DNA from: Selaginella moellendorffii
Lineage: Eukaryota; Plantae; Lycopodiophyta
Direction: 5' to 3'
DNA: 64,000 nucleotides
Assembly (NCBI RefSeq): GCF_000143415.4
Contig: NW_003314262.1
Coordinates: 4,040,021 to 4,104,020, forward strand
The position numbers were made by a program, and so were the translations under genes. The notes under the pieces are model-generated. The model was given only the letters and a program-made list of their open reading frames with translations, had not been told where the DNA came from and searched no databases. Shown here in pieces: positions 3,675 to 44,990 of the stretch; within the stretch, counting starts at the first letter, position 1; each line of letters opens with the position of its first letter.

Positions 3675-5337
3675 TATTTTAGCCATCTTACATTAATACA
3701 CTTACGGTATTATTTCTGATATATTTTTCAAAAACTTTAGAGTTTTCCCATTTACAATTTAAATATAATTTTAAAACAAAATCAGTATTGTTTGCTAGAA
3801 ATTTATGCTATTTATATTGAAAGTATATAACTAAACACTTCTAGAATATTATAATCAGATATCAAATAAATTTTACCATCAGTGAGAGTGTGTGTGTATG
3901 TGTGTCTAAAAATTAATAATATTTGAATAGTGGTTAATAAAATTTGAAGAGCTTCATCAATCCAAAAATCCTAATTATCATAAGTGGAAGGTGTTTTTTG
4001 TTGTAAATCAACATACCATGAAGTTAGGCATTAATGCTACTATAATCATGGAGTCGTCCATATCGTAAAACTAATCCTCCACCACCTTATAGTGATTCAC
4101 TCCCTTGAAGACTGATGGGGGCTTTGGTTTGTACTTGGGAACTGCTTGAGGGAGTGATTCCACTTTGGTTTGTTCGACCTTGTTTGGTTTTGCCAGTCCC
4201 TACCGAAGGGTCCCACCTTCTGAGTTGCTGGCATCCGTAGTCTTTCGCTTTTTCTTTCGCTTCTCATCACGCTTTAGCTTGCATACAAGAGTCTCTAGCA
4301 GGGCATTGGTCTATGCTAATTGTCCTTCTAAAACATCCAATCGAGCCTTGGATGACCGAACCTCGCCACCGGACTCCTGTTTGGAAGTTTCCTCACTAGA
4401 GTCCTCCTCATGCAAGGATTCCTCATCCATAGCTTCTTGTTTGACCAGAGGCTCTAGCTCTGGCAGAGGTTCTGTCTCTGCTTTGGTTTGTTTACGCCCA
4501 TCTCTCAGCAATCTACCTCTATCCTTTGCTAAAACTAAGGAAAAGGCTCCGATACCAAATTGTAAGCCACAAAATTTTCCTTTCCAATTTGCCAACTTAC
4601 CTCGTCTATCCGACTAACACTGCCTTGGCTTTTGCTAAGTTCCCTTGCCAAGGTTCCCACCTATTGTATCAGCTCCTACTTGGTCCTACTTGGTTTTAAC
4701 TACTCACTATATGAGCAACGAAGCGTTAACCATCCATCCATGGATTCCCAAATCTCTCCCAATCCCCCTCCCCAAGTTAGACTTGACTTAAGGTTCGGCT
4801 ACACTCCCTACAAGCATAAGCAACCAAGCACACCAAGCCTCCAGGTTCTTAACATCCCTTGGTACAACAAGACTTGATCATAGGACCTTCTAAATCCCAA
4901 GCCTTGGGGGCAACACTTACTTCAGGACACCGAGGCAAAACATTGTAGCCTAACGGCCTGGTATGGGTACCTTTACCCCCCCCCCCCCCACTTCCATCCC
5001 GAAGGGGAGGTCCAAGCCCCTAGGAAGGGCGAGGACCAATGAGCCACAAGGTACTCAAGTGGGGCACCACTTCACATGAGCCGAGAGCACTGCAGTCGGT
5101 TTCCCTTTTGGGAGTGGGAGCTGTTTTTGAGCACTTCCTTGGGTGGTCCCTCCGGCACCACCTGAGTCCATGCTCACTCCCACCCAACGCCCCTCGGCCC
5201 CAATCTCAACCTCAAGTTAGTTTGGAGAGTTCCTTCAAGATTGATTCCTGGACCTCACTATCCTTACTATACTTCTAGAAACACCCCCCCCTCGGGAGAC
5301 GCGCGCTTTGGGCTTTCACCCTTTGACTTGTATTAGT

Positions 5338-7920: not shown

Positions 7921-9303
7921 TGTAATGCATGTGATCATTGGATGAGATTTGGATACACTGTCACTATGGATTTTTAGAACTTTAGGGGATAAATAGAAAT
8001 AAAATAACCATTAAGGGCTCTCTTATCAAGTAATTACCCTTTTTCCAGTTAGCTTAAGGGGAGAGAGATAAGGTGCTATATATGTGATATCGGAGCAAAT
8101 GACACAGGTTCAATTTCCATTAATTAGTGGCTACTTTAAAAAAATTTAATATATCCTTGAGCAAGGTATATTCCTATCCCTAAATTTGAAATCGTATGTA
8201 ATAGGCATCCATGCGTATGTCTTTCCTCTTGGTGGAGCATCCACGGACAAAGATATCCACTGTAAGACTGTAGTATGGGTAGATGACAAGTTGCTTTATA
8301 TGAAATACTTGGTTTACACAATAGAAGAATTGGTAGATTCAGTGTAGAAATGGAGGTGTTTATTCCCCTTGTCTTAGTAAAGGTTGTTAGTCAATAATCA
8401 ATAAGGACATTGACATCTCTGAAAGGGGGGTGAATGGAAGGATTGGTATAGTTAGTCTACACAATAAAAGAATTGATAGATTCAATGTGGAAATGGAAGT
8501 GTTAATTCCCCTTGACTCAATAAAGGTTGTTAGTCAATAATCAATGAAGACATTGACATCTTTAAAAGGGGGGTGAATATAGCGTATGTGATCATGGGAT
8601 GAGATTTAGATATACTATCACCGTGGATCTTTAGAACCTTGGCTAGAAATAGCCATTAAAGGCTCTCTCATCAAGCAATTATCCTTTTTCCAATTGGCTT
8701 AAGGGGAGAGAGATAAAGTGTGTTACATGTGGTATCAGAGCAAATGGCATAGGTTCGATTCTCATTAATTAGTGGCTACTTAAAAAAATATAATATACCC
8801 TTGAGTAAGATATATTTCTACCCCTAAATTTGAAATCGTGTGTATTGGGCATCCATACATACGTCCTTCTTCTTGGTGGAGCATCCACGGACGAAAGTAT
8901 CCACCATAGGACTATAGTACAGGTAGATGACTAGTTATATCACATGGAATAATTTGTCTATACAATGGAAGAACAATAGTCCATAAAAGACATTGACATC
9001 TCTAAAGGGGGGGTGAGTGTAGCACATGTGATCATGGGATGAGATTTAAATATACTATCACCGTGGATCTTTAGAATCTTGGGGGATAAATAAGAATAAA
9101 ATAGCCATTAAAGACATTGACATCTCTAAAGGGGGGGTGAGTGTAGCACATGTGATCATTGGATGAGATTTAAATATACTATCACCGTGGATCTTTAGAA
9201 TCTTGGGGGATAAATAAGAATAAAATAGCCATTAAAGGCTCTCTCATCAAACAATTGCCCCTTTTCCAGTTGGCTTAAGGAGAGAGAGATAAAGTGTCCT
9301 ACA
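7921..9303 (+). mobile_element. Tandem array of TRIM-like miniature LTR retroelements
   Basis: ~150-160 bp repeats at 7921-8080, 8578-8727, 9018-9110 (partial) and 9142-9303, with TG…CA-like ends. PBS-Met TGGTATCAGAGC at 8730-8741, degenerate copy at ~8083-8096. Polypurine tracts aaaggggggg precede repeats 2-4. No coding capacity. Confidence 0.8.
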
Positions 9304-24272: not shown

Positions 24273-25479
24273 ATGGGGCGACGCTACATCACCGAGGGGG
24301 CGAGGAGAGCGAGCTCGCACTGCGATAGTGGCGAGCGACGAATAAAGAAAAGGAGCAGGGAATCAAGCGTGGATGAGAAGAAAGCCCTAAGAAAGGTACC
24401 AGAGATCACTGCTCTTTGTTTTAGTTCTTTTCCTTCCAGGTAATCAATCTGTGCTTTCAGGTAGCTAAGAAGATGAAAGCAGTCTCGGGCTACAGCAATC
24501 CTTTCGACTTGACTGAATTGTGAGTAGTTTTTTCTGCGTTCTTGGCAAGGTTTCTAGGTAGAGCTAATCCTCGTTTTCCAGGTTTGTTTGGAGGAAGAAG
24601 ATCAAACGCAACTTTGCGAAGAAAACACTGAAGCTGAAAGATATCCGCGTGGAAGCTGAGAGGCAGCGACAGGAGGAAGCCGAGATGGAAACCGAGAAAT
24701 GGGAAGAACGAGCTATGGAGAAAGAAGAGGAAGAGGAAGAGAAAGCAAGGGAGCGAGAGAACGACCGGGAGGACGAGGTATGATATACATGGGTTTTTGA
24801 GTATCCTTTTGCAAACTCTAACGCGTGAACGCAATGCAGCGTCTCTACATGAAAGTCACGACGACTGATCTTCTATCCAGACTCGTCGGCCTGAGGATGG
24901 CCGAGCCTTCTCACATCTTCAAGGGCCTTGGCGTGAAAGCAATGGAGGAGCTACTTGTCAAATTTCGCTTGCATTTGGAGGCGAACAAGAAAAATACCGA
25001 GCTCTGGGAGGCTATGACGGTTGTCTGCGACTCAGAGCTAGCAGAAGCACGAAAGAGAGAGGCTGGAGCTCGCGGTGGAGAGGACCATTTGGTGCTTGAC
25101 GATGCTGGACTCCATACTAGCAACGTGAACACTTCCCTCATAAACATGAGCTCTTGTCAACTCCAGGAAGAGAAAGAAAATATTGAAGAAAAACTAAGAT
25201 CTGGATCAGCCAAGAACGTCGAGTTCTGGAAGAGAGTGCGCGTCTTCAAAGCCAAGGTAAGCAAAAACGTCTTGTGCTTTGTTTCACGATTTAAGTTCTG
25301 ACATAGATGCAAACTTACAGGCACGGCTCCGAGAAATAGCCATGGATCTTCTAGCGCAGCAGCACCACGAGATTTCAAGCGAGGAGGTTATAGAGGAAGC
25401 GATGGCTCCTCGCTCTCCTGAGCCGATTCCTCGTCAAGCGGTTCGAGGAGTGTCCGGCGCCAGCAGAGGGAAAGTCTAG
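24273..25479 (+). pseudogene. Truncated, frameshifted tandem copy of cactin
   Basis: Collinear with 26367-27730 but has internal deletions and lacks the C-terminal cactin domain. Confidence 0.85.
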
Positions 25480-25639
25480 AGCATTCAATCGATTGAAACG
25501 GCTCAAGCAAGAGAATCAATTTTTCTATATGTAAAATGATCTTAGTCAAAACAAACGAAATCGGCCGTGAGATTGTACAAGTTTATGTAGAGATAAAAGT
25601 GCCTTGGCCACCGATGTTCGATTACATCCCTTTCTACAA

Positions 25640-26080
25640 AGATCTCTCTTCAAGCTTTGGTTGTGTGGGAAACGCCTCTTGTTCCTCTGGACGAAAAGCT
25701 GGATCATCAGGATCCTACTTGGGTAGAAGTCCAAGCATTTCTAAAGGGATGAGATATAGAAAACTCCGCCACGGCGTCCTCTTGCTCCTCATCAAGGCTG
25801 TCGTTCTCATCAGGGCAGGAATTCAACAGCCGGAAGTCCAAAACTTGGAATTTCTCAGCTCGTGGTGTTTGTCTGTCCTGATCATGAATGCCTGCCCAAA
25901 AAAAATGAGGAACAAACAAGTAAAATGCAAAGCTTGCTCAGATTCGTGCTAAGCTCTTGGATGCTGGGAAAGTGCATAAAAAACTCCATGATCCAGAAGG
26001 ACTCTTGGCCATCATTCCTTGGAACACTTGGAAAAAACTTTAAACATTCCAACTGTGGCATCTCTTTAAAGAAAAACTAT
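25640..26080 (-). pseudogene. Inverted fragment of an LRR/FBD-like gene family
   Basis: The reverse complement matches 31300-31740 and 44430-44830 (…EFF…FPSIQELSTNL…LDFRLLN…). Confidence 0.65.
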
Positions 26081-26366
26081 GAATATAACATGAATAAAAA
26101 AAGTTTGAGTATTTTGTTCAAAACTTTTATAAACTTAAAATAATTACCACATATCATTTTTGGGATGATAATTAGTATTTGAATAAGTTTCCACGTGGTA
26201 CAATAGTTTAAACACAGCCACTTGTGCAAATTAGAGAATTCTCCTGAATATATTTAAATGTGCATTTAGACCAAATAAATTTTATTGATAGAAATATTTT
26301 ACTTACAACCTTTTGGCAACCTCCTATAAAAATGAGGTCGCAAAGATTTAGGGTTTATCGATTGAT

Positions 26367-28276
26367 ATGGGAGGCTGCGTTGATCTTGACGAGCGACGTA
26401 GAAGGAAGAGAGGCAGGGTGAGTCAATACACCGAGGAGGAGATTCACGATTATCTTGTGAAGAAAGCCCAAAGAAAGGTACCTAGAGATCACTGTTTTTT
26501 GTTTTAGTTCTTCGTTACTAAATCCTGTGTTTTCAGGCAGCCAAGGTAGCTAAGAAGCTGAAACCACAGTTGGTCTCGGGCTATTCAGACGACAGCAATC
26601 CTTTCGGAGACTCCAACTTGACTGAGAAGTGAGTAGTTTCTTGTGCGGTTTTGGCGAGGTTTCTAGAGCTAATCCTCGGTTTCTAGGTTTGTGTGGAGGA
26701 AGAAGATCGAACGCGACATTGCAAATAAGGCACTGAACTTGAAAGATATCTCCGTGAAAGCTGAAAGGGTGCGCCAGGAGGAACAGATGGTAAGTTAGAA
26801 TCTCTTCTTTAGATCGCTTGTTTGTTGCTCGGTTTTGCTCATGTTCTTGTGTTTCCAGAAGGAAATCGAGAAGGTTAAGAAGAAACGGGAAGAGAGAGCC
26901 ATGGAGAAAGCAAAGAACGAGGAAGAGAAAGCCATGCTAGCAAGAGAGCGAGCAAGGGCAGAGTTCCAAGACTGGGAGAAAAAGGAAGAAGAGGTATGAT
27001 ATAAATGTTTTTTTGCGTATCCTTTTGCAAGTTCTAATTACGCGTGAATGCACTGCAGTTTCTTTTCCACCAACGGGAAGTCCGTGCCGAGATACGCATC
27101 AAGGAGGGCCGAGCCACGAAGATTGATCTTCTATCCAAGCTCGACGACTTGAGGATGGCCGAGCCTTACCTCATCTTCAAGGGCCTTAGCGTGAAAGAAA
27201 TGGAGAAGCTACGTGAAGAACTTCGCTTGCATTTGGAGCTGGACAGGAAAAATACCGAGTTCTGGGAGGCCATGACGGTTGTCTGCGACTCAGAGCTAGC
27301 AGAAGGACGAAAGAGAGAAGCTGGAGCTTGCGGTGGAGAGGATAATTTGGTGCTCGACGATGCTGGACTCCATACCAGCATTGATCTAGACGTAAACACT
27401 CTCCTCCAAAACATGACCTCGCGTCGACTCCAGGAAGAGCAAGCAAAGATAGAAGAAAAGTTGAGATCTGGATCAGCCAAGAACGTCGAGTTCTGGGAGT
27501 CCGTCCTGAAGAGAGTGCACGTCTTCAAAGCCAAGGTAAGCAAAACGTCTTGTGCTCTGTTTCACGATTTAAGTTCTGACATATAGATGCAAACTTACAG
27601 GCACAGCTCCGAGAAATAGCCATGGATCTAGCGCAGCAGCACCACGAGATTTCAAGCGAGAAAGTTATAGAGGAAGCGATGGCTCCTCGCTCTCCTGAGC
27701 CGATTCCTCGTCAAGCGGTTCGAGGAGATGGGATTCCAGGGTTTGCGAGAGCAGAGCTGGGAAAAGTAGAAGACGCCGATGCTGAGTTTGGCTCCGGGGC
27801 GGAAGTCAGTGTGGAATCTGATCACGTAAACCTGTGGCGTGACAAGTACAGTCCACGAAAGCCCAAGTACTTGAACAGGGTCCATACGGGATACGAGTGG
27901 AACAAGTACAATCAAACGCACTACGATCACGATTCTCCGCCACCAAAAACTGTCCAGGGATACAAGTTCAACATCTTCTACCCCGATTTGATCGACTGGA
28001 CGAAGGCACCAACGTTTGCGATCGAGAGAGACGGGATCAGTGGCGATACTGCCATCATCAGATTCACTGCGGGTGCTCCATACGAAGATATTGTAAGTGT
28101 TTGATGGTTTCTCTTCGTTGTGCTCGTTGTTTTCCATTCTAACTTGTGTGCTACAGGCGTTTCGCATCGTCAACAAGGAGTGGGAGCGCTCCCCCAAGAA
28201 CGGATTCAAGTGTACATTTGAGCGAGGTATCCTCTGCGTTTACTTCAATTTCAAGCGATATCGCTACAGGAGATGA
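26367..28276 (+). CDS. Cactin (spliceosome-associated)
   Basis: GYSDDSNPFGDSNLTEKFVWRKKIE; PRKPKYLNRVHTGYEWNKYNQTHYDHD…VQGYKFNIFYPDL; terminal FNFKRYRYRR*. Confidence 0.93.
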
Positions 28277-29676: not shown

Positions 29677-30775
29677 TTAGTCGCGGAGTTTAGCTGTAAA
29701 CACCGAGAAGCTTTCCTCCTCGGACCTGGAAACTTTGGCCGTTTTAGAAGCATAATTCGCTGGCTTCGACCGTGCCTTCTCGCATCTTCCCTGCGGAGCT
29801 TGCGGGTTCCTGTTTTCTTTCATCTGGCCCTTGCGGATATCGGTGGTCGCGTCCACTTTTACTTGCCTGTTCTTCTCGCCAAGAACAGGCCTGCTCGCAG
29901 TAGCTTGTTTCTTCGATGGAGCATTCCTGTCTGGAGCCTTGGTGGATCTTAAGCTTTTCGCCCAGTCGAAAGTTTTCCCCCAGAAGCGTGGTGACAGTCG
30001 CAAAGTTTTTAGTTGCTCTTCCAGGCGCACAGGTTTTTCCGCTTCTACGAATTGCGTTTTAGTCACACCTTCCTTTTGTCTCGACTTAGTTGGGCCTTTC
30101 TTCTCAGTATTGTCACTCGACTTCACGAGCTTTTTCTCCCTCGGGACGTTGTCTCTGGATTTTTCCGGATTGGAGCGTGCCAATCGCGTCCCTCCTACGT
30201 TCTCCTTTTGCAAGATCCTGACTCGTTGCTGAAAGTTCTTTTCGTTGGATGGCTTCTTACGGGAGACATTCTCTGCTGCGAAGCTTTTCTTCGACAAAGG
30301 GTCGCTTAGTGCCATCTTTTTCTCTTCACGCTCGCATTGTAAGTCGGCCAGCTTCTTTGACAGCGCCGCGATCCCACTTTGCAGCTCTTCCTCGAGCCTA
30401 CGATCGTTCTCATCTTCCAGCTCCGCCTGGACGATCGTTTCTAGCAGCTCTCCTTCAATGTTACGATCCGGACCATGAATCCAGCATTCATCGAAACTTC
30501 TTTCCACACCACGTTGCAATGTAGCTGGCGTGGCCAAAGAACAAGCCTCTCTAAAAGCTGGATCATCGCTGAGAACTTTCCTCGTGGAAGTTAAGGACCC
30601 GAAAGACACAGCACCGATCACGCCAACATTGACAGCGAACTTCCCAGCGGACGAGAAATTCTTCGCTGTGGAGCTCCATGATCCCTTCAATCCAGGCCGC
30701 CGCTCGCTGGAGCTAGAGCTACTGCCAATGGTCTCGGATCGATAGGCCGCATTGCTCCAAACCACAGCACACTCG
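29677..30775 (-). CDS. Basic coiled-coil protein with WxNAA motif (plant-specific, possibly microtubule-associated); 5' end unresolved
   Basis: 362-codon frame; VWSNAAY followed by coiled coil LEEELQSGIAALSKKLADLQ and a Lys/Arg-rich tail. Confidence 0.55.
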
Positions 30776-31117
30776 CTGTGGAGGGCCGTGGTGGAAGAAG
30801 AATCATCAGGGCGCTGAGAAGCCGACGAAGAGGGATCGCCTGCCAGGCCAAGGCACCACTAAGTCTTTCCGCTCGCTCAATCGAAGATTACCTGAGGGAA
30901 AGTCCTTGCGCTGCAATGGCGGCGTCGATCTGGCCGCCCTGCGATTGCAGGAGTGCTTGGATTCGACCGCTCGCTTCTTCGTCTCCCTCGCCCGCCCGGA
31001 GCTCCACATTTACTACGCTGCCTAGAACCCTAACGAGATTTTAGCCGATCAAATAAACCCTAAAATCTCATTATTTCGTTACATTTTAGGATCCCAGCAC
31101 GATCGAGCGTCTTCCGA

Positions 31118-31790
31118 TGGCTTCATCTTCCGCGATTCGAGCGTCTTCCAATGGCTTGCAGAAGGTAAGATCCTTGAGAGGTTGCACATCAGATCCTTGT
31201 CCAAGCTCGAGCTAGTTTCTCCATTTAGTATCTTATGCACTCTTGAAGTATGGGGCGATTGTTTTACTGTTGGAGAGTTGGAGTCATATCATAGTCTTTT
31301 CTTGGGAAAATGCCACAATTGGAGTGTCTAAAGCTTTTTCCAAGCTTTTCAGGAGACAAAAGCCAAAAGTCACTATGCATCGTGGAATTTTTCAAGTGCT
31401 TTCCCAGCATCCAAGAGCTGAGGACGAACCTAAACATGTTGTGCATAAGCTTTACACTTTCCTTGATTGCGCATGCCTCACTGGATGGATCTGTTTGTTG
31501 GTGACCAGGTATTCAGGAGCAACGAATACAAGAAGCTCAACCTTGAGAAGCTTGAAGTTTTGGATGTTCGCCTGCTGAATCTCAGCCCTGATGAGAACGA
31601 CGAGTGTGACGATGAGAAAGAAGAAGCTGTCAAGGAGGCAACAAAAGTTTTTCTGGCTGCGGCACCCAACGCGGACTTTCGCTTGACTGTCCCAGGTATT
31701 CCAGTTTTGCATTTTATCATCCCTTTAGAAATGCTCGAACTTGTAACACTCTTGACATTTCTTGCCATCCGAGCACGTTGCTGTTAACTC
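31118..31790 (+). pseudogene. Degenerate LRR/FBD-like gene
   Basis: FFKCFPSIQELRTNL and LEKLEVLDVRL…VFLAAAPNA lie in different frames; paralogous to 43774-44830 and 25640-26080. Confidence 0.6.
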
Positions 31791-31881
31791 GTATCATCCG
31801 GCTCAGATTCAGGAAAGAAAGTGACAGACAAGTTCAACATGCAAGATTGCAAGCAATGGATCCAGGTCTTGTGCTGTCTAA

Positions 31882-34410
31882 GACGAAATCGAACATGAGG
31901 GGCCATGGGATGTATATAGCCAGCCTGGAGTCTAATCCAAGGTGGCAAGAGATTCATGTGGACGCTAAAATGAGTGGGCACAAGATTTGTATATATTTAC
32001 ATGGAGAAAATGACAAAGTGGTAGTTAGGGTATCGGAGTAAACGATGATCTCATGGGCAAAACAAGACCACGCAGCGAGCAGCAAGGCTACACAGACTCT
32101 AGATCGCGTGACTGCTTGACTGCAGCAGAAGAAGAGGAAGGGAAAAATCCGTGTTGTAGAAAAATTCATTCAAGATCAGGGTTGGAGCGTGCTGGAAATT
32201 GTAGAAGAAATGACCAGGAAAAATCCGTGCTGTAGAAAAATTCATTCAAGATCAGGGTTGTAGCGTGTTGGAAATTGTAAAAGAAATGACCACAACTAAG
32301 GCAATACCAATCCCTCTCTTTACAGGCACAGATTTTGAGAGATTTCGTTCTTCTTTCTCCGGGACTGTCCAGGGATAGACCTTAAGTCAGCGGAAGACGA
32401 ATGGCAGGTCAGAGGCAACTTGCACCACCACCACCTGGATATCACGAAGACCATAAAAGAGAATTGGTTGAAGAATGTATTCAGAACCAAGCCAGCCCAG
32501 AGATTTCAAAAGTTGAGTTAAAGTCTAAACTTTTTCACTTAAAAATGGCAGCAAACGAGACTCCAACAGCTTTTTTAGGAAGGCTGAAGTCAGTGCTCTC
32601 CCAGCTGTCAAAGTCTAGGTGAAGTCACCGAGAATGATAAGTGAGCATCTTTGGTTCGCCCAGAATTGAAATCATTGAAGACTATGCTCAAGAACTCGAT
32701 GAAAACCTTCATTGAAATGCAAGTAGTTCTTATCAATGAAGAAGGACCAGCTGAATACCAAACACCCATAGATACAACCACAACCACAGCTTTGTTTGTC
32801 AACTCAAAGCAAATAAAGAATTCTTCGGCAGCACTAGCAGTTTCAAGGCTAGTGTGAGCAACACTGCGAGCAGTTTCAAGGTTAGCAATGTTGGAGATAG
32901 CAACTCACGTGAGTGTAAAGGTGAGTGCAATTATTGTAAGTGGGTTGGACACTACACCAGAGAATGCTGAGACAGGTTAGCCGGGTGTCCTCAAGGATTG
33001 GGGAAAAAGAATATACAAACCAGTCAAAAGCTCTCATGGTAAGAGCTATTCCAGAACCAGTGTTTGTTCAGCAGCAAGATCAAGACGTAATCTCATTGGA
33101 CACAGCAGCAAATATGCACATGACTTGTATAGCATGAGTAGTCATCAATGCAAAGCTTCTCACCTGCTAGTTATGTGCATATTTGATGCTGTGTCCAGCG
33201 AGATTACGTCTTGATCCTGCTGCTGAACAAACACAGGTTCTAGAATAGCTCTTACCATGAGAACTCTTGACTCCTTTGTATATTCTTTCTCCCCAATCCT
33301 CAAGGATGCCCTACTAACCTGTCTCGGCATTCTCAAGCATAGTGTCCAACCCACTTACAATAATTGCACTCACCTTTACGCTCGCATGAGTTGTTGTCTC
33401 CAACATTGCTAGCCTTGAAACTGCTCACAGTGTTGCTCACACCAGCCTGCTGCCAGAAAATTCTTTGTTTGCTTTGAGTTGACAAACAAAGTTGTGGTTG
33501 TGGTTGTATCTGTGGGTGTTTGGTCTTCAGCTGGTTCTTCTTCATTGATAAGAGCTGCTTGCATTTCAATGAAGGTTTTCATTGAGTTCTTGAGCATAGT
33601 CTTCAATGATTTGAATTCTGGGCGAACCAAAGCATTGAGAAGAATTGCTCGCTTATCATTCTTGGTGACTGTTTCACCTAGACTTGACAGCTGGGAGAGC
33701 ACCAACTTCAGCCTTCCTAAAAAAGCTGCTGGAGTCTTGTCCGCTACCATTTTTAAGCCAAAAAGTTTAGACTTTAACTCAACCTTTGAAATCTCTAGGC
33801 TGGCTTGGTTCTAAATACATTCTTCAAGGCTGTCCAATTCTCTTTTGCGGTCTTTGTGATATCCAGGTGGTGGTGGTGCAATTTGCTCAAGCCAATCCCC
33901 ATGGTGGAGACTGCCTTATCATTTCTGACCTGCCATTCGTCTTCATCGCTTGCTGCTACTTAATCTCTGTCCCCTGGACAGCTCGGAGACAGTTGTCCCG
34001 GAGAAAGAGGAATGAAATCTCTTTCACCCAATTCTCAAAATCCATGCCTGTAAAGAAAGGGATTGCTATTGCCTTAGTTGTGGTCATTTCTTCTACAATT
34101 CCAGCACGCTCTAACCCTGATCTTGACTGAATTTTTCTACAGCACGGATTTTTCCATTCCTCTTCTTCTGCTGCAGTCAAGCAGTCATGCGATCTAGAGT
34201 CGTGTAGCCTTGCTGCTCGCTGCGTGGTCTTATTTTGCCCATGAGATCATCGTTTGCTCCAATACCATTACCACTTTATCATTTTCTCCATGTAAATATA
34301 TACAAGTCTTGTGTCCGCTCATTTCAGCGTCCACATGAATCTCTTGCCACCTTGGATTAGACTCCAGGCTGGCTATCTACATCCCATGGCCCCTCATGTT
34401 CGACTTTGTC
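31882..34410. mobile_element. Fold-back inverted repeat of a Ty1/copia gag-protease 5' fragment (arms 31882-33127 and 33167-34410, ~39-nt loop)
   Basis: The arms are reverse complements. They encode IPFFTGMDFENW, KVELKSKLF…FLGRLK…LSQL (gag), CNYCKWVGHY…EC (CCHC knuckle) and ISLDTAANMHMT (protease-like) at the apex. Both arms contain stops. Confidence 0.92.
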
Positions 34411-34653
34411 CCTGGGTACAAAGATCTCCGAATGACAGCTCCGGATTTGTTCGAGATTAAAGAGGTTTCAACTTGAAGAAGTGAAACGTATTTCTCTTCT
34501 ATTTCTCGCTTGATTCCTCAGCTTTCATTGTTGTAGCATAAACATCGATGTCATTTTCTTAACGCTTTGGTGATGGTGACTATAGCGGGGAGGCCCAGCA
34601 GAGCGGCAGAGAGAGCGGCCGAACGAAAGGGGAGGGTTTCGCGCTAAATCCGG

Positions 34654-36021
34654 TTGGCCAGCAAAAGGTCAGATACTTTTGGTTTCTGTGACGATCAAAT
34701 TTGTTATCGTATGGCCAAGGACCTCTTACAGCTCGCTCAGCCACTGCTTGATGTCCAGCCAGGATCATGCAGTGAAAAGTTTGGCGGTGATTCAAAGAGA
34801 ATCAGTAAGGACGTCGCCATGTTTTTGCTCAAGAGGATGGCTTTCCAGATGGAGGTGTCGGGGAATGCCTTCTCTAGCAGGGACGATCCGGCGTGGACAG
34901 AGTTGGGATACAGGCCGATAGTCAGTCACTTCCTCGGGGCATTCACGTCTCTGGCTCTAAAGTTTGGGGAGCGCCTCGAAGAAGAAGAGGAAGAGGAAGA
35001 GCGCTACAATGATCCGCGTGTTGATTCGTTCCAGGATGACAAGAGTGTCGGAGAGTTTGCGAAGTGGTTATCGCTGGAGCTGGCTAACCGGGCTGAAGAG
35101 CAAGGGAACGACGAGGAAGAAGAAGGAGAAAACGAAGTAGAAGACGAGGAAGAAAAGGATGGCGATGGTGGCGAGGGTGACAAAGACGATGAAGAAGATG
35201 AAGATGGTGAAGCTCACAGTGGCCGTGACTTGTCCGAGTACTTTCCTCTAGATGAGCAAGCCAAGAGTTTCACGAACGAAGCAGTCCTCCTCCGGATGTA
35301 TGGACGTGACCACGCCATCAACCAGCACATCACTCTGGGAGTTTTGGGTGGAAGAGGCGCGGATGAATGGCCGGACGATGCCTTCGAGATGTTCTACTAC
35401 GGGTGCGCCGCCGCGATGCGCAACATACGAGCAGGAAGGATGGACAAGATCCCGTGCATAGCCGTTGGACTCAAATGGTGGGCTTCGGGAGAGATCGATC
35501 CGGTGGGCTTCGTCCGGGTCACCGCCAAGTACAAGATCACGAGCTCAAGCGCCGCAGCGTTCAAGTCCCACGTCGAACAGAAGTGCGAGTGTCTGGAGCT
35601 GCGAGGCCAAGGCCGCAGAGCCCGCAAGCTTAGGCGAAAGTATCTCCAAAAGAGCGATGGAGCGCTCATCGCTGCTCTCGAGGCGCGAGTTCGCGCAAGA
35701 ACAGCCGAGGCCGCCATGAATCTCGACGAGAAATCTTTCCAAGAGGTGGAGCATCGCTACAAGTCCAGTGCATTCGCAGCCAAGCCATGCAATCTCCTCG
35801 TGGGAGAGGCCACATATCCGCCCCAATCCTCCACGATGCTGCGGTTTCCACTGGATAGAAACGCAAGGTCTGGCGATGGTGACAAAGACCTGGTGTCGGG
35901 GATGGCAAGGACGCTCTTTGGAGACCGTGTTCTTCGCTGGAGCTTGAGAAGCGTGGGGAAGCTTTCGCGGGAACGCGATCAAGTCACAAGGTTCTTTGCG
36001 AGCTCTCTTGTAGCATCCTAA
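34654..36021 (+). CDS. Intronless lineage-specific protein with acidic insert; distant paralog of the 39035-40718 gene with a degenerate REase-like fold
   Basis: 455-codon frame (first ATG 34711). YGCAAAMRNIRAGRMDKI…WASGEIDPVGFVRV and RTLFGDRVL…FFASSL align with the 39-kb gene. Confidence 0.65.
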   Translation: MASKRSDTFGFCDDQICYRMAKDLLQLAQPLLDVQPGSCSEKFGGDSKRISKDVAMFLLKRMAFQMEVSGNAFSSRDDPAWTELGYRPIVSHFLGAFTSLALKFGERLEEEEEEEERYNDPRVDSFQDDKSVGEFAKWLSLELANRAEEQGNDEEEEGENEVEDEEEKDGDGGEGDKDDEEDEDGEAHSGRDLSEYFPLDEQAKSFTNEAVLLRMYGRDHAINQHITLGVLGGRGADEWPDDAFEMFYYGCAAAMRNIRAGRMDKIPCIAVGLKWWASGEIDPVGFVRVTAKYKITSSSAAAFKSHVEQKCECLELRGQGRRARKLRRKYLQKSDGALIAALEARVRARTAEAAMNLDEKSFQEVEHRYKSSAFAAKPCNLLVGEATYPPQSSTMLRFPLDRNARSGDGDKDLVSGMARTLFGDRVLRWSLRSVGKLSRERDQVTRFFASSLVAS

Positions 36022-36864
36022 AGAACTTCTTCCATCACTTTCTTCGTTTCAAGAGCTCATCTTCCTCCAATCTAAAATACTCGGGTATTTTTCCAGATGC
36101 CCGCACTGGGCATTTTCTTGAAGCGTTTTCGTACGAATATAGACGACGGCGGGAAAAAAACATAAATTCGTGTTCTTGTGGGAAGCTAATCCAAGTGTTT
36201 GCGCAGAGGAGAAGACGAGAAGCTCAATCCCAGTGATTCCAGAGTGCTCGAGCGAGGTTTTCCATGCGAGCGGCCACAACCTGGGTGGAAAAGCTGGAAG
36301 ATCACTATGATCTGAGCTCTTATCGGGGTCCTACAAATGCTCGATCACGTTCTTGTCTCGCTCGCGTCGATCCTCAGAGCTTGCGAAGAAAAACTCAAAT
36401 CCGGAAGAATGCGCGTGTCGTGGGAAGAAAAGTCCTCTATCTGCAAGCGCTTAAGGAAAATTTGAGACTATGATCGATCGTCCTTGGAGCCTCTCGGCGG
36501 AGAAGGTATTCCCATTCCCGCCGCAAGCCATTGTGTGGGTGTATTCTCTTTACCAGTGCATCCCGGCGCACGCAGCATGGATTCAGAGGATTCTTCTTTG
36601 TTGTGGCATTGGCAGTGTTCGCCGGGAATGCTTCCTCCTGGAGGAGAGGAATAAAAACAGGCAGTTTGCTTGGATTTGCTTGGGTGACAAAGATATGTCA
36701 CTTGGGCTTCATTCATGGTGGCAAAGGATAGAGAAGAATGATGCGGAAGTATCGAGCGAGGACTACATGGCGTCTTTCAGCATTTTTAATACAATGCTCT
36801 TGCCGTTACCTTCGGTCTTAGCAAGTAGTGGATATTATGTAAGGATGCTGGCCTGCATTTACCT

Positions 36865-42314: not shown

Positions 42315-43364
42315 ATTTCCCCTCAAAACGTAATTGCCATTCTTTAGCAACTTAAAGCATGTAGTAAAGCCCCCCATGGTTGGACCATGTAAACGTCCGC
42401 CAATGAGAGCAGTAGATCTCAGTTTCAGACTGTCTTCTTGACAATGTAAAAACCAATTATAGTAATCACCAAGACTCCTGATGTCAATTTGTTAATATAG
42501 TGTTGTGTTTAAATCATTCCTGGTCCCAAAACCTTCTCGCACAATTGCTGCTCTTCATGTGGCCAAACTGGTGGCTGCCCCTTGAAAAGAGTAAAGATTC
42601 CATTCTTTTCACCCTGCATCCTCTTCCATTTAGCCTTGGCAAGCTTCTTACCTTCATTTACCTGTGTTATTAGCAAAAGTAAAACCATCATCAGTCCTTA
42701 GAATTCAATTTGGACTAGAGATTCTTTAATGTACTTTGTCAATTCTTATATTTGTGGCTTGGGATTTGCCACTGGTGCCTTCTTGTTGTCATTCGGCTTT
42801 TTCTGCTGCTCCTTCATGTATACTGCAAACAGCATAACATCTTCCTTTTCCTCTGCTCAAGAATCTTTCCCCACAAATTTTTGCTGATCTTGCTCTTCCT
42901 TTGCTGACTCTTCAGCAACTACCAAATGATTCATTGATCCTTTCTAAAGCAATGGGCAATTCTTGGCTCAGTGATCATCAACTACACAACTACAGCATTT
43001 TTCAGATTTTTGGCATAAAACAAATTTTCTATTTCCATAACTTTTTACCAAAAAATTACTCAAATATCCTCACCTGATTGAGAGCTTCTCTTAACTCATA
43101 TCGTCCAGCTTGGAACAAGAGACGTTTCCCATGGCTTCCGAAGTTCGAATGCATCCCTGAGTACGAAGATCTGCCAACGTACAGTAAATGGTGACCTTAT
43201 GGCAGATGTGCTTGTAGCTCTAGATCAATATGGGATTGCTCATCGTCTACATGATCATCATAGGTAAAGTCACTTTTTCTCTCACATCTACTCTCCTTTG
43301 GAACCATTCTTTTTTTGTTCTCGAGCATGTGTTTCACCTTTGTTCCGTCCCCGTGCCTTCCAGG

Positions 43365-44990
43365 TGGTGCCATGCGATCTCATAGTGGGAGAGGCTATAT
43401 ATCTGCCTCAATGCTCCGGTTTTCCACTGGATAGAAACGCAAGGTTCGGCGATGGCGGCAAAGAGGATGGCAAGACCATATTGTGTTGGAGGCCGTGTTC
43501 TTCGCTGGAGCTGAGAAGCGTGGAAAAGCTCTCGCGTGGCCATGGTGAAGCGACAAGAATCTTTGTGAGCTCTCACTTATTTTCTTCGTTTCAAGCTTCG
43601 TGGAAGTTAGGACCCAAAAGACGCATCACCGACATCCCACCTTCCCGGCAGTCCCTAGTGAACGAGAAATATTTCGTTGTGGAGCTCCATGATCTCTTCA
43701 ATCCAGGCCGCCGCTCGCTGGAGCTAAAGCTACCGATAGGCCGCATTGCTCCACAAAGTCTAGGGTTCTTTTGATGGCTCCATCTTCCAGCGCTTATATA
43801 CTCACTCGTAGCAATTCCAGTGGTTTGCAAGCTATGGATATTTCTTGCTTCGAAGAGCCAGAGGTCAGCTCTACCCGGAGTTGAAGCCCCGGTGCGCATG
43901 CTTCCATCTCCTTGAATCATTCTGCAGCCTAGAAGATCTTTCGCTTGGTCAAGGCAGTAATGCGCAACGGCAGCCATCTCTTCATGCCGAGGTAACAAAG
44001 TCTTGATCATGTGGGTCGAGTTTCCAGAAGTACTTCTAGCGCTAGATCTCTGCTTCCTCTCCTTGGAATCTCCACACCTTGAGGTGTTCTCCATCGGCTC
44101 ATTCTTGGCTATTCAATGCAAGGCCCTCCCACGCTTGACGAGGCTCCCGTGATGCAGTTTAGGCTTTCGAATCGACAGGGGCAACGCTTCTGGAGTACTT
44201 GAGATTGCAAATGGTGGACGTCAACCTAGAGTTACACAACCCCAACGTGAACTACTTGGAGCTCCTGAGTTGCAGAGGCCCATGGCACTGATAAATGTGA
44301 GTGGATGACTGGTCACACAGGGTAAGATCCTTGAGAGGGTGCACCTCAATGGCTTGTTCTAGCTAGAGGTGGTTTCTTCTCCGCTTAATTTCTTATGTAA
44401 TCTGGAAGTTCTTTCCTTGGAGAGATGCACGTTTGGAGTGTTTAAAGCTTTCTCCAAGGTTTCAAGAGAATAAAGGCCAGGACTCATTGTGCATTTTGGA
44501 GTTTTTCATGCGCTTACCCAGCATCCGAGAGCTGAGGACGAACCTGAGCATGTAGCGAGTAAGCTTTGCATTGTACTTGATTGATTATTTGATTCATCGG
44601 TGCCTCACTGGATTTTTGTTGGTGATCAGGGATTCAGGAGTGACAAACACAGAAAGCTCAACCTCGAGAAGCTCCAAGTTTTGGACGTCTGGCTGCCATT
44701 TTCCAGCCCAGGCGAGAACAACAAAGAGCAAGAGATGGCAACCAAAGTTCTGCTGGCAGCGGCACCCAACGCGGACTTTCAATTGACTGTCGAGATTTCT
44801 ATAGATCATTCCTTTCGAAACGCTTGAACTTGTATTTCACCGTTCAAGGTGGCCCCGAATGTTCAACGACAAAATCTGCCAACAACAGCTCCGGAAGAGG
44901 TTGAAACGTCAAAAGGTATTTCTCTTCTATCAGGATTCTTCAAAGATATGCTGTTTACTTTTCTTCGTTTCAAGAGCTCATCTCCCAGCT
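43365..44990 (+). pseudogene. Patchwork segmental duplicate of 30.6-36.1 kb (REase-like 3' end, coiled-coil gene fragment, LRR/FBD-like pseudogene)
   Basis: 43365-43590 ≈ 35785-36050; 43600-43752 ≈ 30584-30758; 44322-44833 ≈ 31165-31745; 44885-44930 ≈ 34435-34502; 44957-44983 ≈ 36037-36063. Confidence 0.85.

What the first reader, a model, noticed from the sequence alone, without database searches (positions are those of the whole stretch)
31882..34410. 2.5-kb fold-back palindrome made of Copia gag, directly upstream of the REase-like gene
Seen in sequence: two ~1.25-kb inverted arms with a ~39-nt loop, whose apex falls at the protease-like motif. The arms differ by many substitutions and indels (e.g. 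a ~77-bp duplication at ~32140-32293 in the left arm only), so a read fold-back artefact is unlikely. Retrotransposition does not normally create such structures. Inference: read-through from the upstream pseudogene promoter (~31.05 kb, telo-box) would give long hairpin RNA, a Pol IV-independent siRNA source. It could silence this Copia family in trans and methylate the adjacent gene in cis.
Basis: partly seen in the sequence, partly recalled or inferred. Interest (0 to 1): 0.75.

Follow-up and report, generated by a model that had tools for sequence, protein, structure and literature searches.

The report
Fold-back Copia relic splitting F-box gene
A dead Copia jumping gene that had landed in an exon of a spikemoss F-box gene later had its front half, together with 29 letters of the host exon, copied backwards onto itself; the resulting 2.5-kb palindrome is real and could fold into hairpin RNA, but nothing here shows that it does.

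Summary
The palindrome is real. Its arms are 31882-33125 and 33169-34410, 92% identical, with about 20 indels and a 43-nt single-copy centre. The genome is Selaginella moellendorffii.

Each arm holds a short LTR (about 115 bp), an initiator-Met-type primer site, a leader, and Copia gag up to the protease motif.

New here: the outer 29 bp of both arms are not Copia. They are coding sequence of an F-box-family gene. On the right this piece lies in gene orientation and runs straight on into the rest of the exon. On the left it is an inverted copy.

So the right arm is the original insertion into an exon. The left arm is a later DNA-level inverted copy made by fold-back or template-switch repair. 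It is not a reverse-transcription error and not an assembly artefact.

"REase-like" found no support.

RNA from either strand would fold into a long hairpin. Transcription, small RNAs, trans-silencing and cis-methylation remain untested, and the flanks carry no locus-specific CpG-decay footprint.

The scan has already reported similar fold-back Copia loci elsewhere in this genome. This is a new member of a known kind (Mu killer-like).

The parts
31055..31062 (+). Telo-box AAACCCTA in the promoter region of the split gene
   Evidence: 11 matches in the window against 1.5 expected from shuffles
31118..31825 (+). Upstream half of the split F-box-family gene: degenerate F-box start, the LRR-like exon 'A' and the exon piece 'X'. 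It is a pseudogene.
   Evidence: tblastn with SELMODRAFT_403694 (P0005) and P0004: residues 211-274 match 31503-31694 and residues 284-303 match 31769 onward. P0005 has an F-box, PF12937. DNA paralogues lie at 44321-44834 and 25771-26082. Read directly from the sequence, the F-box start is out of frame relative to P0005.
31826..31881 (.). Left junction: about 56 bp of unassigned sequence (possible filler DNA)
   Evidence: No significant match to the LTR, the arms, exon piece M in either orientation, or the paralogues
31882..31910 (-). Inverted copy of 29 bp of host exon (piece M); outermost part of the left arm
   Evidence: 27 of 29 identical to the reverse complement of 34382-34410. That piece is host coding sequence.
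31911..32026 (+). Left-arm LTR, about 116 bp, starting TGTA
   Evidence: The boundary is set by the end of host homology. A primer-site-like 12-mer follows it.
32027..32039 (+). Left-arm primer-binding site, initiator-Met type, degraded
   Evidence: aligned to the right-arm site found
32127..32278 (+). 76-77-bp tandem duplication in the leader, left arm only
32286..33125 (+). Left-arm gag remnant, running to just past the protease motif. It is heavily deleted and gives no Pfam hit.
33126..33168 (.). Single-copy centre of 43 nt
   Evidence: Taken alone it has no more self-complementarity than shuffles (z = -0.05).
33169..34087 (-). Right-arm gag remnant (the original copy): PF14223 domain in two reading frames, a CCHC knuckle and the protease motif
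   Evidence: 33798-33959 covers profile positions 29-76 (27.5 bits) and 33412-33810 covers 78-169 (30.3 bits)
34256..34267 (-). Right-arm primer-binding site, two mismatches from the canonical initiator-Met 12-mer
34268..34381 (-). Right-arm LTR, about 114 bp, starting TGTA on the minus strand
34382..34467 (+). Host exon piece M in gene orientation. The first 29 bp are also the outer end of the right arm.
   Evidence: tblastn: P0005 residues 304-332 match 34381-34467 (52% identity, E = 7e-7) and P0004 residues 250-276 match (E = 4e-6). DNA paralogues without Copia lie at 43127-43184, 25602-25646 and 44848-44930.
34654..36021 (+). Downstream half of the split gene ('B'): an open 455-codon frame with no recognisable domain
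   Evidence: 94% identical to SELMODRAFT_406126. No hit in Pfam, PDB or the Atlas.

Best explanation
A Ty1/copia element inserted, on the minus strand, into a coding exon of an F-box-family gene of Selaginella moellendorffii. It decayed there and acquired at least three frameshifts. Later a DNA-level repair or replication accident turned back inside the protease region. This was either fold-back priming at a break or a two-step template switch. It re-copied the element's own 5' part (gag, leader, primer site, LTR) and ran 29 bp out into the host exon before rejoining the chromosome on the left. The pol genes and the 3' LTR were lost. The result is the palindrome: the right arm is the original and the left arm is the inverted copy. 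Since then both arms have decayed like methylated, unselected DNA. RNA of either strand would form a hairpin of about 1.2 kb, so the locus has the anatomy of a Mu killer-type silencer. That activity is inferred, not shown.

Shown: the structure, its composition, host DNA inside both arms, and which arm is the original. Inferred: the repair pathway, the loss of pol in the same event, and any RNA or silencing role.
For: Arms, spacer and divergence.

Copia identity: PF14223 above the curated cut-off in two frames, a CCHC knuckle and protease motif, and a primer site.

Host DNA in the arms. 34382-34438 is one uninterrupted match to paralogous 'empty' sites p43 and p25 (local alignment scores 38 and 35 against shuffle maxima of 25-26). 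p44 also spans the site. The sequence left of 34382 has no match in those paralogues. Paralogous proteins read straight across the site. The left arm ends with the same 29 bp inverted, 27 of 29 identical. Beyond that, the two flanks are unrelated (z = -0.2).

Both arms share the frame changes at PF14223 profile position 76/78, before the knuckle, and after the knuckle. So the source was already dead when it was copied.

All 8 indels whose direction can be judged lie in the left arm. This fits the left arm being the product of low-fidelity repair synthesis.

Transitions between the arms hit CG sites about 4 times, and CHG sites about 2 times, as often per site as CHH sites. CpG o/e is 0.39-0.47 in the arms.

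Hairpin potential.

Fold-back and template-switch routes to inverted duplications with short spacers are documented (PMC7467729, PMC3907307, PMC11724301, PMC2621351).
Against: No full-length family member was available, so LTR length, the target-site duplication and the polarity of the spacer rest on this locus alone. No microhomology is evident at the left junction, and 56 bp there are unexplained. The spacer shows no significant inverted microhomology. Paralogue p25 carries the same exon piece inverted, with a breakpoint within a few bp of the Copia insertion site. This could mean that a short inverted host repeat existed before the event and seeded it. That would still be a DNA-level event. 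There are no data on transcription or small RNAs.
Confidence: 0.75

Rival explanations
1. Working hairpin-siRNA 'Copia killer' locus. The palindrome is transcribed, either from the split gene's promoter or from its own inward-facing LTRs. The hairpin is diced into siRNAs that silence the family in trans and methylate neighbours in cis.
For: Either strand folds into a hairpin with about 1100 cross-arm pairs and 19 helices of 21 bp or more. The palindrome lies inside an old transcription unit downstream of a telo-box promoter. Its architecture mirrors Mu killer, which has two copies of the element's 5' end joined head to head about 1.3 kb in (PMC3440606). CG- and CHG-biased transitions between the arms suggest the arms were methylated after they formed.
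Against: No expression or small-RNA data. The host gene's 5' half is a pseudogene. The arms decay freely (8% substitutions, about 20 indels), with no sign that pairing is maintained. No other family copy is in the window, and no protein close to its gag turned up among 1.8 billion cluster representatives. No locus-specific CpG-decay footprint in the flanks. Any transposon relic would be methylated.
Confidence: 0.12
2. Reverse-transcription snap-back before integration: a palindromic cDNA was made in the particle and then integrated. Earlier follow-ups proposed this for sister loci in this genome.
For: The scan noted several fold-back Copia elements in this genome. Self-priming by reverse transcriptase is a known error (general knowledge).
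Against: Both arms carry 29 bp of host exon beyond the LTR end. A cDNA cannot contain this. No target-site duplication flanks the palindrome. The shared frameshifts fit an old resident copy.
Confidence: 0.04
3. Two independent head-to-head insertions of the same family, or a much larger inverted segmental duplication later trimmed by deletion.
For: The exon piece M is also found inverted in paralogue p25, so inverted host copies can arise in this gene family.
Against: Two insertions at the identical nucleotide, both truncated at the same protease position, are very unlikely. Homology stops sharply after 29 bp on the left. The 'larger palindrome trimmed later' version cannot be excluded, but it is the same kind of DNA-level event.
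Confidence: 0.06
4. Assembly or cloning artefact (chimeric fold-back read).
For: Palindromes are a known artefact class (general knowledge).
Against: The arms differ by about 90 substitutions and 20 indels, including a 77-bp duplication in one arm only. An artefact would give identical arms.
Confidence: 0.02

Closest known systems
Mu killer of maize (a natural inverted duplication of MuDR)
   Same: Two copies of the element's 5' end (terminal repeat plus the first roughly 1.3 kb of coding sequence) joined head to head. The rest of the element is missing. It sits next to or inside a host gene whose transcription could read through. A long hairpin RNA is predicted (PMC3440606).
   Different: Mu killer derives from a DNA transposon and has genetically proven dominant, heritable silencing activity. 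Here the element is an LTR retrotransposon, the arms are already 8% diverged, and no activity is shown.
Fold-back inversions and inverted duplications from hairpin-primed or template-switch repair (yeast, human)
   Same: An inverted duplication with a short single-copy spacer, loss of adjacent sequence, and a second junction without homology (PMC7467729, PMC3907307, PMC11724301, PMC2621351).
   Different: The described cases are mostly large terminal duplications, or insertions of 5-34 bp. This one is a small interstitial example of 1.27 kb, fixed in a plant germ line and old enough to have decayed.
Other fold-back Copia loci flagged by this scan in the same genome (s1-432117, s1-421085, s1-341505)
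   Same: Dead Copia elements carrying an inverted copy of part of themselves, in S. moellendorffii. All were judged real, with silencing unproven.
   Different: Those follow-ups favoured a reverse-transcription error before integration. At this locus, host exon DNA inside both arms points to a post-integration event.
Rearranged endogenous pararetroviruses proposed as heritable RNA-based immunity
   Same: Inverted rearrangements of integrated retro-elements, proposed as hairpin-RNA sources (PMC9868043, abstract only).
   Different: A different element class. I did not read beyond the abstract.

Membership tests
Ty1/copia LTR retrotransposon (fragment) | Copia-type gag domain (Pfam PF14223) | tested here: met
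   Right-arm pieces score 27.5 and 30.3 bits against a cut-off of 27 and together cover profile positions 29-169. Left-arm pieces give no hit.
Ty1/copia LTR retrotransposon (fragment) | CCHC zinc knuckle after gag and an aspartic-protease D-(S/T)-G motif | tested here: inconclusive
   The knuckle is present in both arms. The protease motif reads D-T-A in both arms, i.e. mutated. No Pfam protease hit.
Ty1/copia LTR retrotransposon (fragment) | Primer-binding site complementary to initiator tRNA-Met next to the 5' LTR | tested here: met
   34256-34267 (-) has 2 mismatches to the canonical 12-mer. The left-arm copy is more degraded. The canonical 12-mer is recalled from general knowledge.
Ty1/copia LTR retrotransposon (fragment) | Two LTRs in direct orientation, TG..CA ends, 5-bp target-site duplication, pol order integrase before reverse transcriptase | tested here: not met
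   Only the 5' LTR survives, twice and inverted. It starts TGTA, but its 3' end is not a clear CA. There is no 3' LTR, no pol and no duplication. This fits a truncated relic, not an intact member.
Mu killer-type transposon inverted duplication acting as a silencer | Head-to-head duplication of the element's 5' end giving a long self-complementary transcript | tested here: met
   Structure. Predicted fold.
Mu killer-type transposon inverted duplication acting as a silencer | Transcription across the repeat, siRNAs from it, and heritable trans-silencing of active copies | not testable with these tools
   No RNA, small-RNA, methylation or genetic data were available.
Fold-back / template-switch inverted duplication (DNA repair product) | The inverted copy includes sequence from outside the mobile element, with only one copy contiguous with its native context | tested here: met
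   The 29-bp exon piece is native on the right and inverted on the left.
Fold-back / template-switch inverted duplication (DNA repair product) | Short single-copy spacer with inverted microhomology at the turn | tested here: inconclusive
   The 43-nt spacer is present. Its self-complementarity is no better than shuffles. Eight per cent decay may have erased any microhomology.
Mobile fold-back (palindromic) transposon family | Target-site duplication and multiple copies with both arms | tested here: not met
   No direct repeat flanks the palindrome and no other copy is in the window. The rest of the genome could not be searched.

The most novel reading that the evidence does not exclude
S. moellendorffii repeatedly turns resident Copia elements into hairpin genes by fold-back repair (the scan has flagged several such loci). 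At least some of them, including this one inside a still-promoted F-box pseudogene, would then be transcribed and diced into siRNAs that hold their families down. [quoted passage not shown] A second strand: the one-sided excess of indels in the copied arm would be a natural fossil record of error-prone break-induced synthesis.
Probability: 0.1. Interest if true: 0.7.

Novelty: new member of a known kind. Interest (0 to 1): 0.35.

Why it matters
Natural hairpin loci derived from transposons are thought to start transposon silencing, but few have been dissected base by base, and Mu killer itself was never fully sequenced through its centre. This locus is readable end to end. It shows from sequence alone that the palindrome arose in chromosomal DNA after integration, because host exon DNA was caught in the copy. 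It also shows which arm is the original. That matters for the sister loci in this genome, where a reverse-transcription origin was assumed: the same test (is there host DNA in the arms?) can be applied to them. Whether the locus silences anything is open, and public small-RNA data could test it directly.

Tried and rejected
1. Finding other family members. The scan's sequence index returned nothing. So there is no outgroup, no full LTR and no other haplotype.

2. The idea that the LTR-like region also belongs to the host repeat unit. Rejected: there is no significant similarity upstream of piece M in p43, p25 or p44.

3. The idea that arm homology continues past 31882/34410, or that the left filler is a degenerate direct or inverted copy of M. 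Rejected.

4. The left filler as a remnant of the lost 3' LTR. The best local match had z = 2.2, which is not convincing.

5. A small hairpin in exon piece M as the stop point of the copy. It is not more stable than shuffles.

6. Inverted microhomology within the spacer. Not above chance.

7. CpG decay spreading into the upstream half-gene. Rejected: paralogues far from any palindrome are just as CpG-poor.

8. The 'REase-like' label for ORF B. No Pfam, PDB-sequence or Atlas hit, and the AlphaFold model was unusable (mean pLDDT 35), so no fold search was run.

9. An Rfam scan of 30500-36500 found no known RNA family.

The calculation was redone from window coordinates only.

The exons of the split gene were compared separately.

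Full report
**Observation**

The inverted repeat is real and far beyond chance. The repeat finder chains nine collinear inverted segments from 31882 to 34410, with 43 nt between the innermost arms. blastn of one arm against the window recovers the other arm at E = 0 and 1e-142, and nothing else. A global alignment gives 92% identity over about 1150 aligned positions, 88-92 substitutions with a 3.5:1 transition bias, and about 20 indels. The 76-77-bp tandem duplication at 32127-32278 is in the left arm only. Such divergence rules out a chimeric-read artefact.

**Organism and setting**

The ORF at 34654-36021 is 94% identical to SELMODRAFT_406126 of Selaginella moellendorffii. The window is gene-rich: it holds a lipid desaturase, a TORTIFOLIA1-like gene, an amino-acid transporter and a cytochrome b561-N protein.

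**What the arms are made of**

Read from the outside inwards, each arm holds:
- 29 bp discussed below;
- an LTR-like stretch of about 115 bp starting TGTA;
- a 12-mer close to the initiator-tRNA-Met primer site (34256-34267; the left-arm copy is more degraded);
- a leader;
- an ATG (32286 on +, 34087 on -);
- Copia gag.

Two right-arm pieces hit Pfam PF14223 above its curated cut-off and together cover profile positions 29-169, but in two different reading frames. A CCHC knuckle follows. The arms end about 40 nt past a protease-type motif that reads D-T-A in both arms.

Both arms share the frame change at profile position 76/78, a second before the knuckle and a third after it. So the copied template was already a dead element.

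**The key result: the outer 29 bp are host, not Copia**

The stretch 34382-34438 straddles the right end of the palindrome. It aligns without a break to three other places in the window:
- p43, 43127-43184;
- p25, 25602-25646;
- p44, 44848-44930.

The identity is about 70-76%, the level typical of the surrounding paralogous gene copies. Local alignment scores are 38 and 35, against shuffle maxima of 25-26.

Left of 34382 those places have no similarity to the LTR. In p43 the neighbouring sequence is instead the exon piece X, which in our locus lies left of the palindrome (31781-31803; z = 4.9).

Proteins of two annotated paralogues read straight across the site. P0005 (SELMODRAFT_403694) has an F-box domain, PF12937. 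Its residues map as follows:
- 211-274 to 31503-31694;
- 284-303 to 31769 onward;
- 304-332 to 34381-34467 (52% identity, E = 7e-7);
- 339 onward to 34717 onward.

So the element sits in a coding exon of an F-box-family gene.

The 29 bp at 34382-34410 are in gene orientation and contiguous with the rest of the exon. The 29 bp at 31882-31910 are their reverse complement, 27 of 29 identical. Immediately outside those 29 bp the two flanks are unrelated.

A cDNA cannot contain host exon sequence, and two independent insertions at the same nucleotide are very unlikely. The right arm is therefore the original insertion. The left arm is a later inverted copy of chromosomal DNA that ran 29 bp past the LTR into the host.

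**Mechanism (inferred)**

The anatomy is:
- an inverted duplication with a short single-copy centre;
- loss of the adjoining pol and 3' LTR;
- a second junction without homology, next to about 56 bp of unassignable sequence.

This matches fold-back or template-switch repair as described in yeast and human (PMC7467729, PMC3907307, PMC11724301, PMC2621351). I could not find significant microhomology at either turn.

One observation fits low-fidelity synthesis of the copy. All eight indels of 3 nt or more whose direction can be judged lie in the left arm. They are deletions of 13, 14, 36, 6, 3 and 12 nt and duplications of 77 and 13 nt. The right arm meanwhile still matches the Pfam profile almost without gaps (two-sided binomial 0.008). 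The polarity of the 13- and 14-nt deletions rests on the usual gag N-terminal pattern recalled from general knowledge. Chance or unequal decay cannot be excluded.

**Age and epigenetic footprint**

The Kimura distance between the arms is 0.082. That gives roughly 3-8 million years at substitution rates of 1.3e-8 to 5e-9 per site per year. These rates are borrowed from other plants. The age would be less if part of the divergence arose during the copying itself.

Per site, transitions between the arms hit CG cytosines about four times, and CHG cytosines about twice, as often as CHH cytosines. CpG o/e is 0.39-0.47 in the arms against about 1.0 in the downstream half-gene. This is the usual mark of a methylated transposon.

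The upstream half-gene is also CpG-poor, but its paralogues at 44.4 kb and 25.8 kb are equally so. So there is no evidence that methylation spread from the palindrome.

**Hairpin potential**

RNA of either strand folds to about -1945 kcal/mol, against -703 for shuffles. It forms about 1100 cross-arm pairs and 19 uninterrupted helices of 21 bp or more.

The palindrome lies inside an old transcription unit behind a telo-box promoter. Both LTRs face inward, so read-through is not the only possible source of a hairpin transcript. A transcript from the left LTR would also continue into ORF B.

None of this could be tested. No small-RNA, RNA-seq or methylation data were at hand. No known RNA family maps here. 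No second family member is in the window.

**Comparison with what is known**

The architecture is that of Mu killer: two copies of the element's 5' end joined head to head about 1.3 kb in, beside a host gene (PMC3440606). Here, however, the source is an LTR retrotransposon and no activity has been demonstrated.

The scan has already reported fold-back Copia loci elsewhere in this genome. Those follow-ups favoured a reverse-transcription snap-back. At this locus that origin is contradicted.

**Limits**

- The gag search of 1.8 billion representatives gave only two weak hits.
- ORF B could not be characterised: no Pfam, PDB or Atlas hits, and a model of pLDDT 35. "REase-like" is therefore unsupported rather than refuted.
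Exons and frame pieces were searched separately.

**Verdict**

This is a real, old, post-integration fold-back of a dead Copia inside a split F-box gene. It is a new member of a known kind. It has a clear origin readable from sequence and an untested silencing potential.

Noticed in passing
window 25602-25668 and 25724-26082: In paralogue p25 the same exon piece M lies inverted relative to its upstream exon. The breakpoint falls within a few bp of the place where Copia inserted in the studied locus, at a CCATGG. No LTR similarity lies beside it. This could be a micro-inversion or a fragile site in this gene family.
   Followed up: partly
window 25.6-26.1 kb (-), 31.1-36.0 kb, 36.9-38.5 kb, 43.1-45.0 kb: A cluster of diverged, partly scrambled copies of an F-box gene family whose C-terminal half (ORF B type) has no recognisable domain. 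Annotated relatives are SELMODRAFT_403694, 406142 and 406126.
   Followed up: partly
window 34654-36021: ORF B has stayed open for 455 codons, while the neighbouring Copia arms picked up about 20 indels in 1.2 kb. It may still be under selection as a stand-alone gene after being cut off from its F-box half.
   Followed up: no
whole window: The telo-box AAACCCTA occurs 11 times against 1.5 expected from shuffles, mostly near gene starts.
   Followed up: no
window 24374-25450 and 26456-27727: Direct repeats of about 1.1 kb at 75-79% identity flank the p25 gene fragment. This may be an old LTR pair or a tandem duplication.
   Followed up: no
window 4546-4557 (-), 8730-8741 (+), 7928-9303: Initiator-Met-type primer-site matches and a block of short direct repeats suggest other small LTR or TRIM-like elements in the first 10 kb.
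   Followed up: no
window 31826-31881: About 56 bp at the left junction of the palindrome match nothing tested. This may be filler DNA from the repair event.
   Followed up: yes
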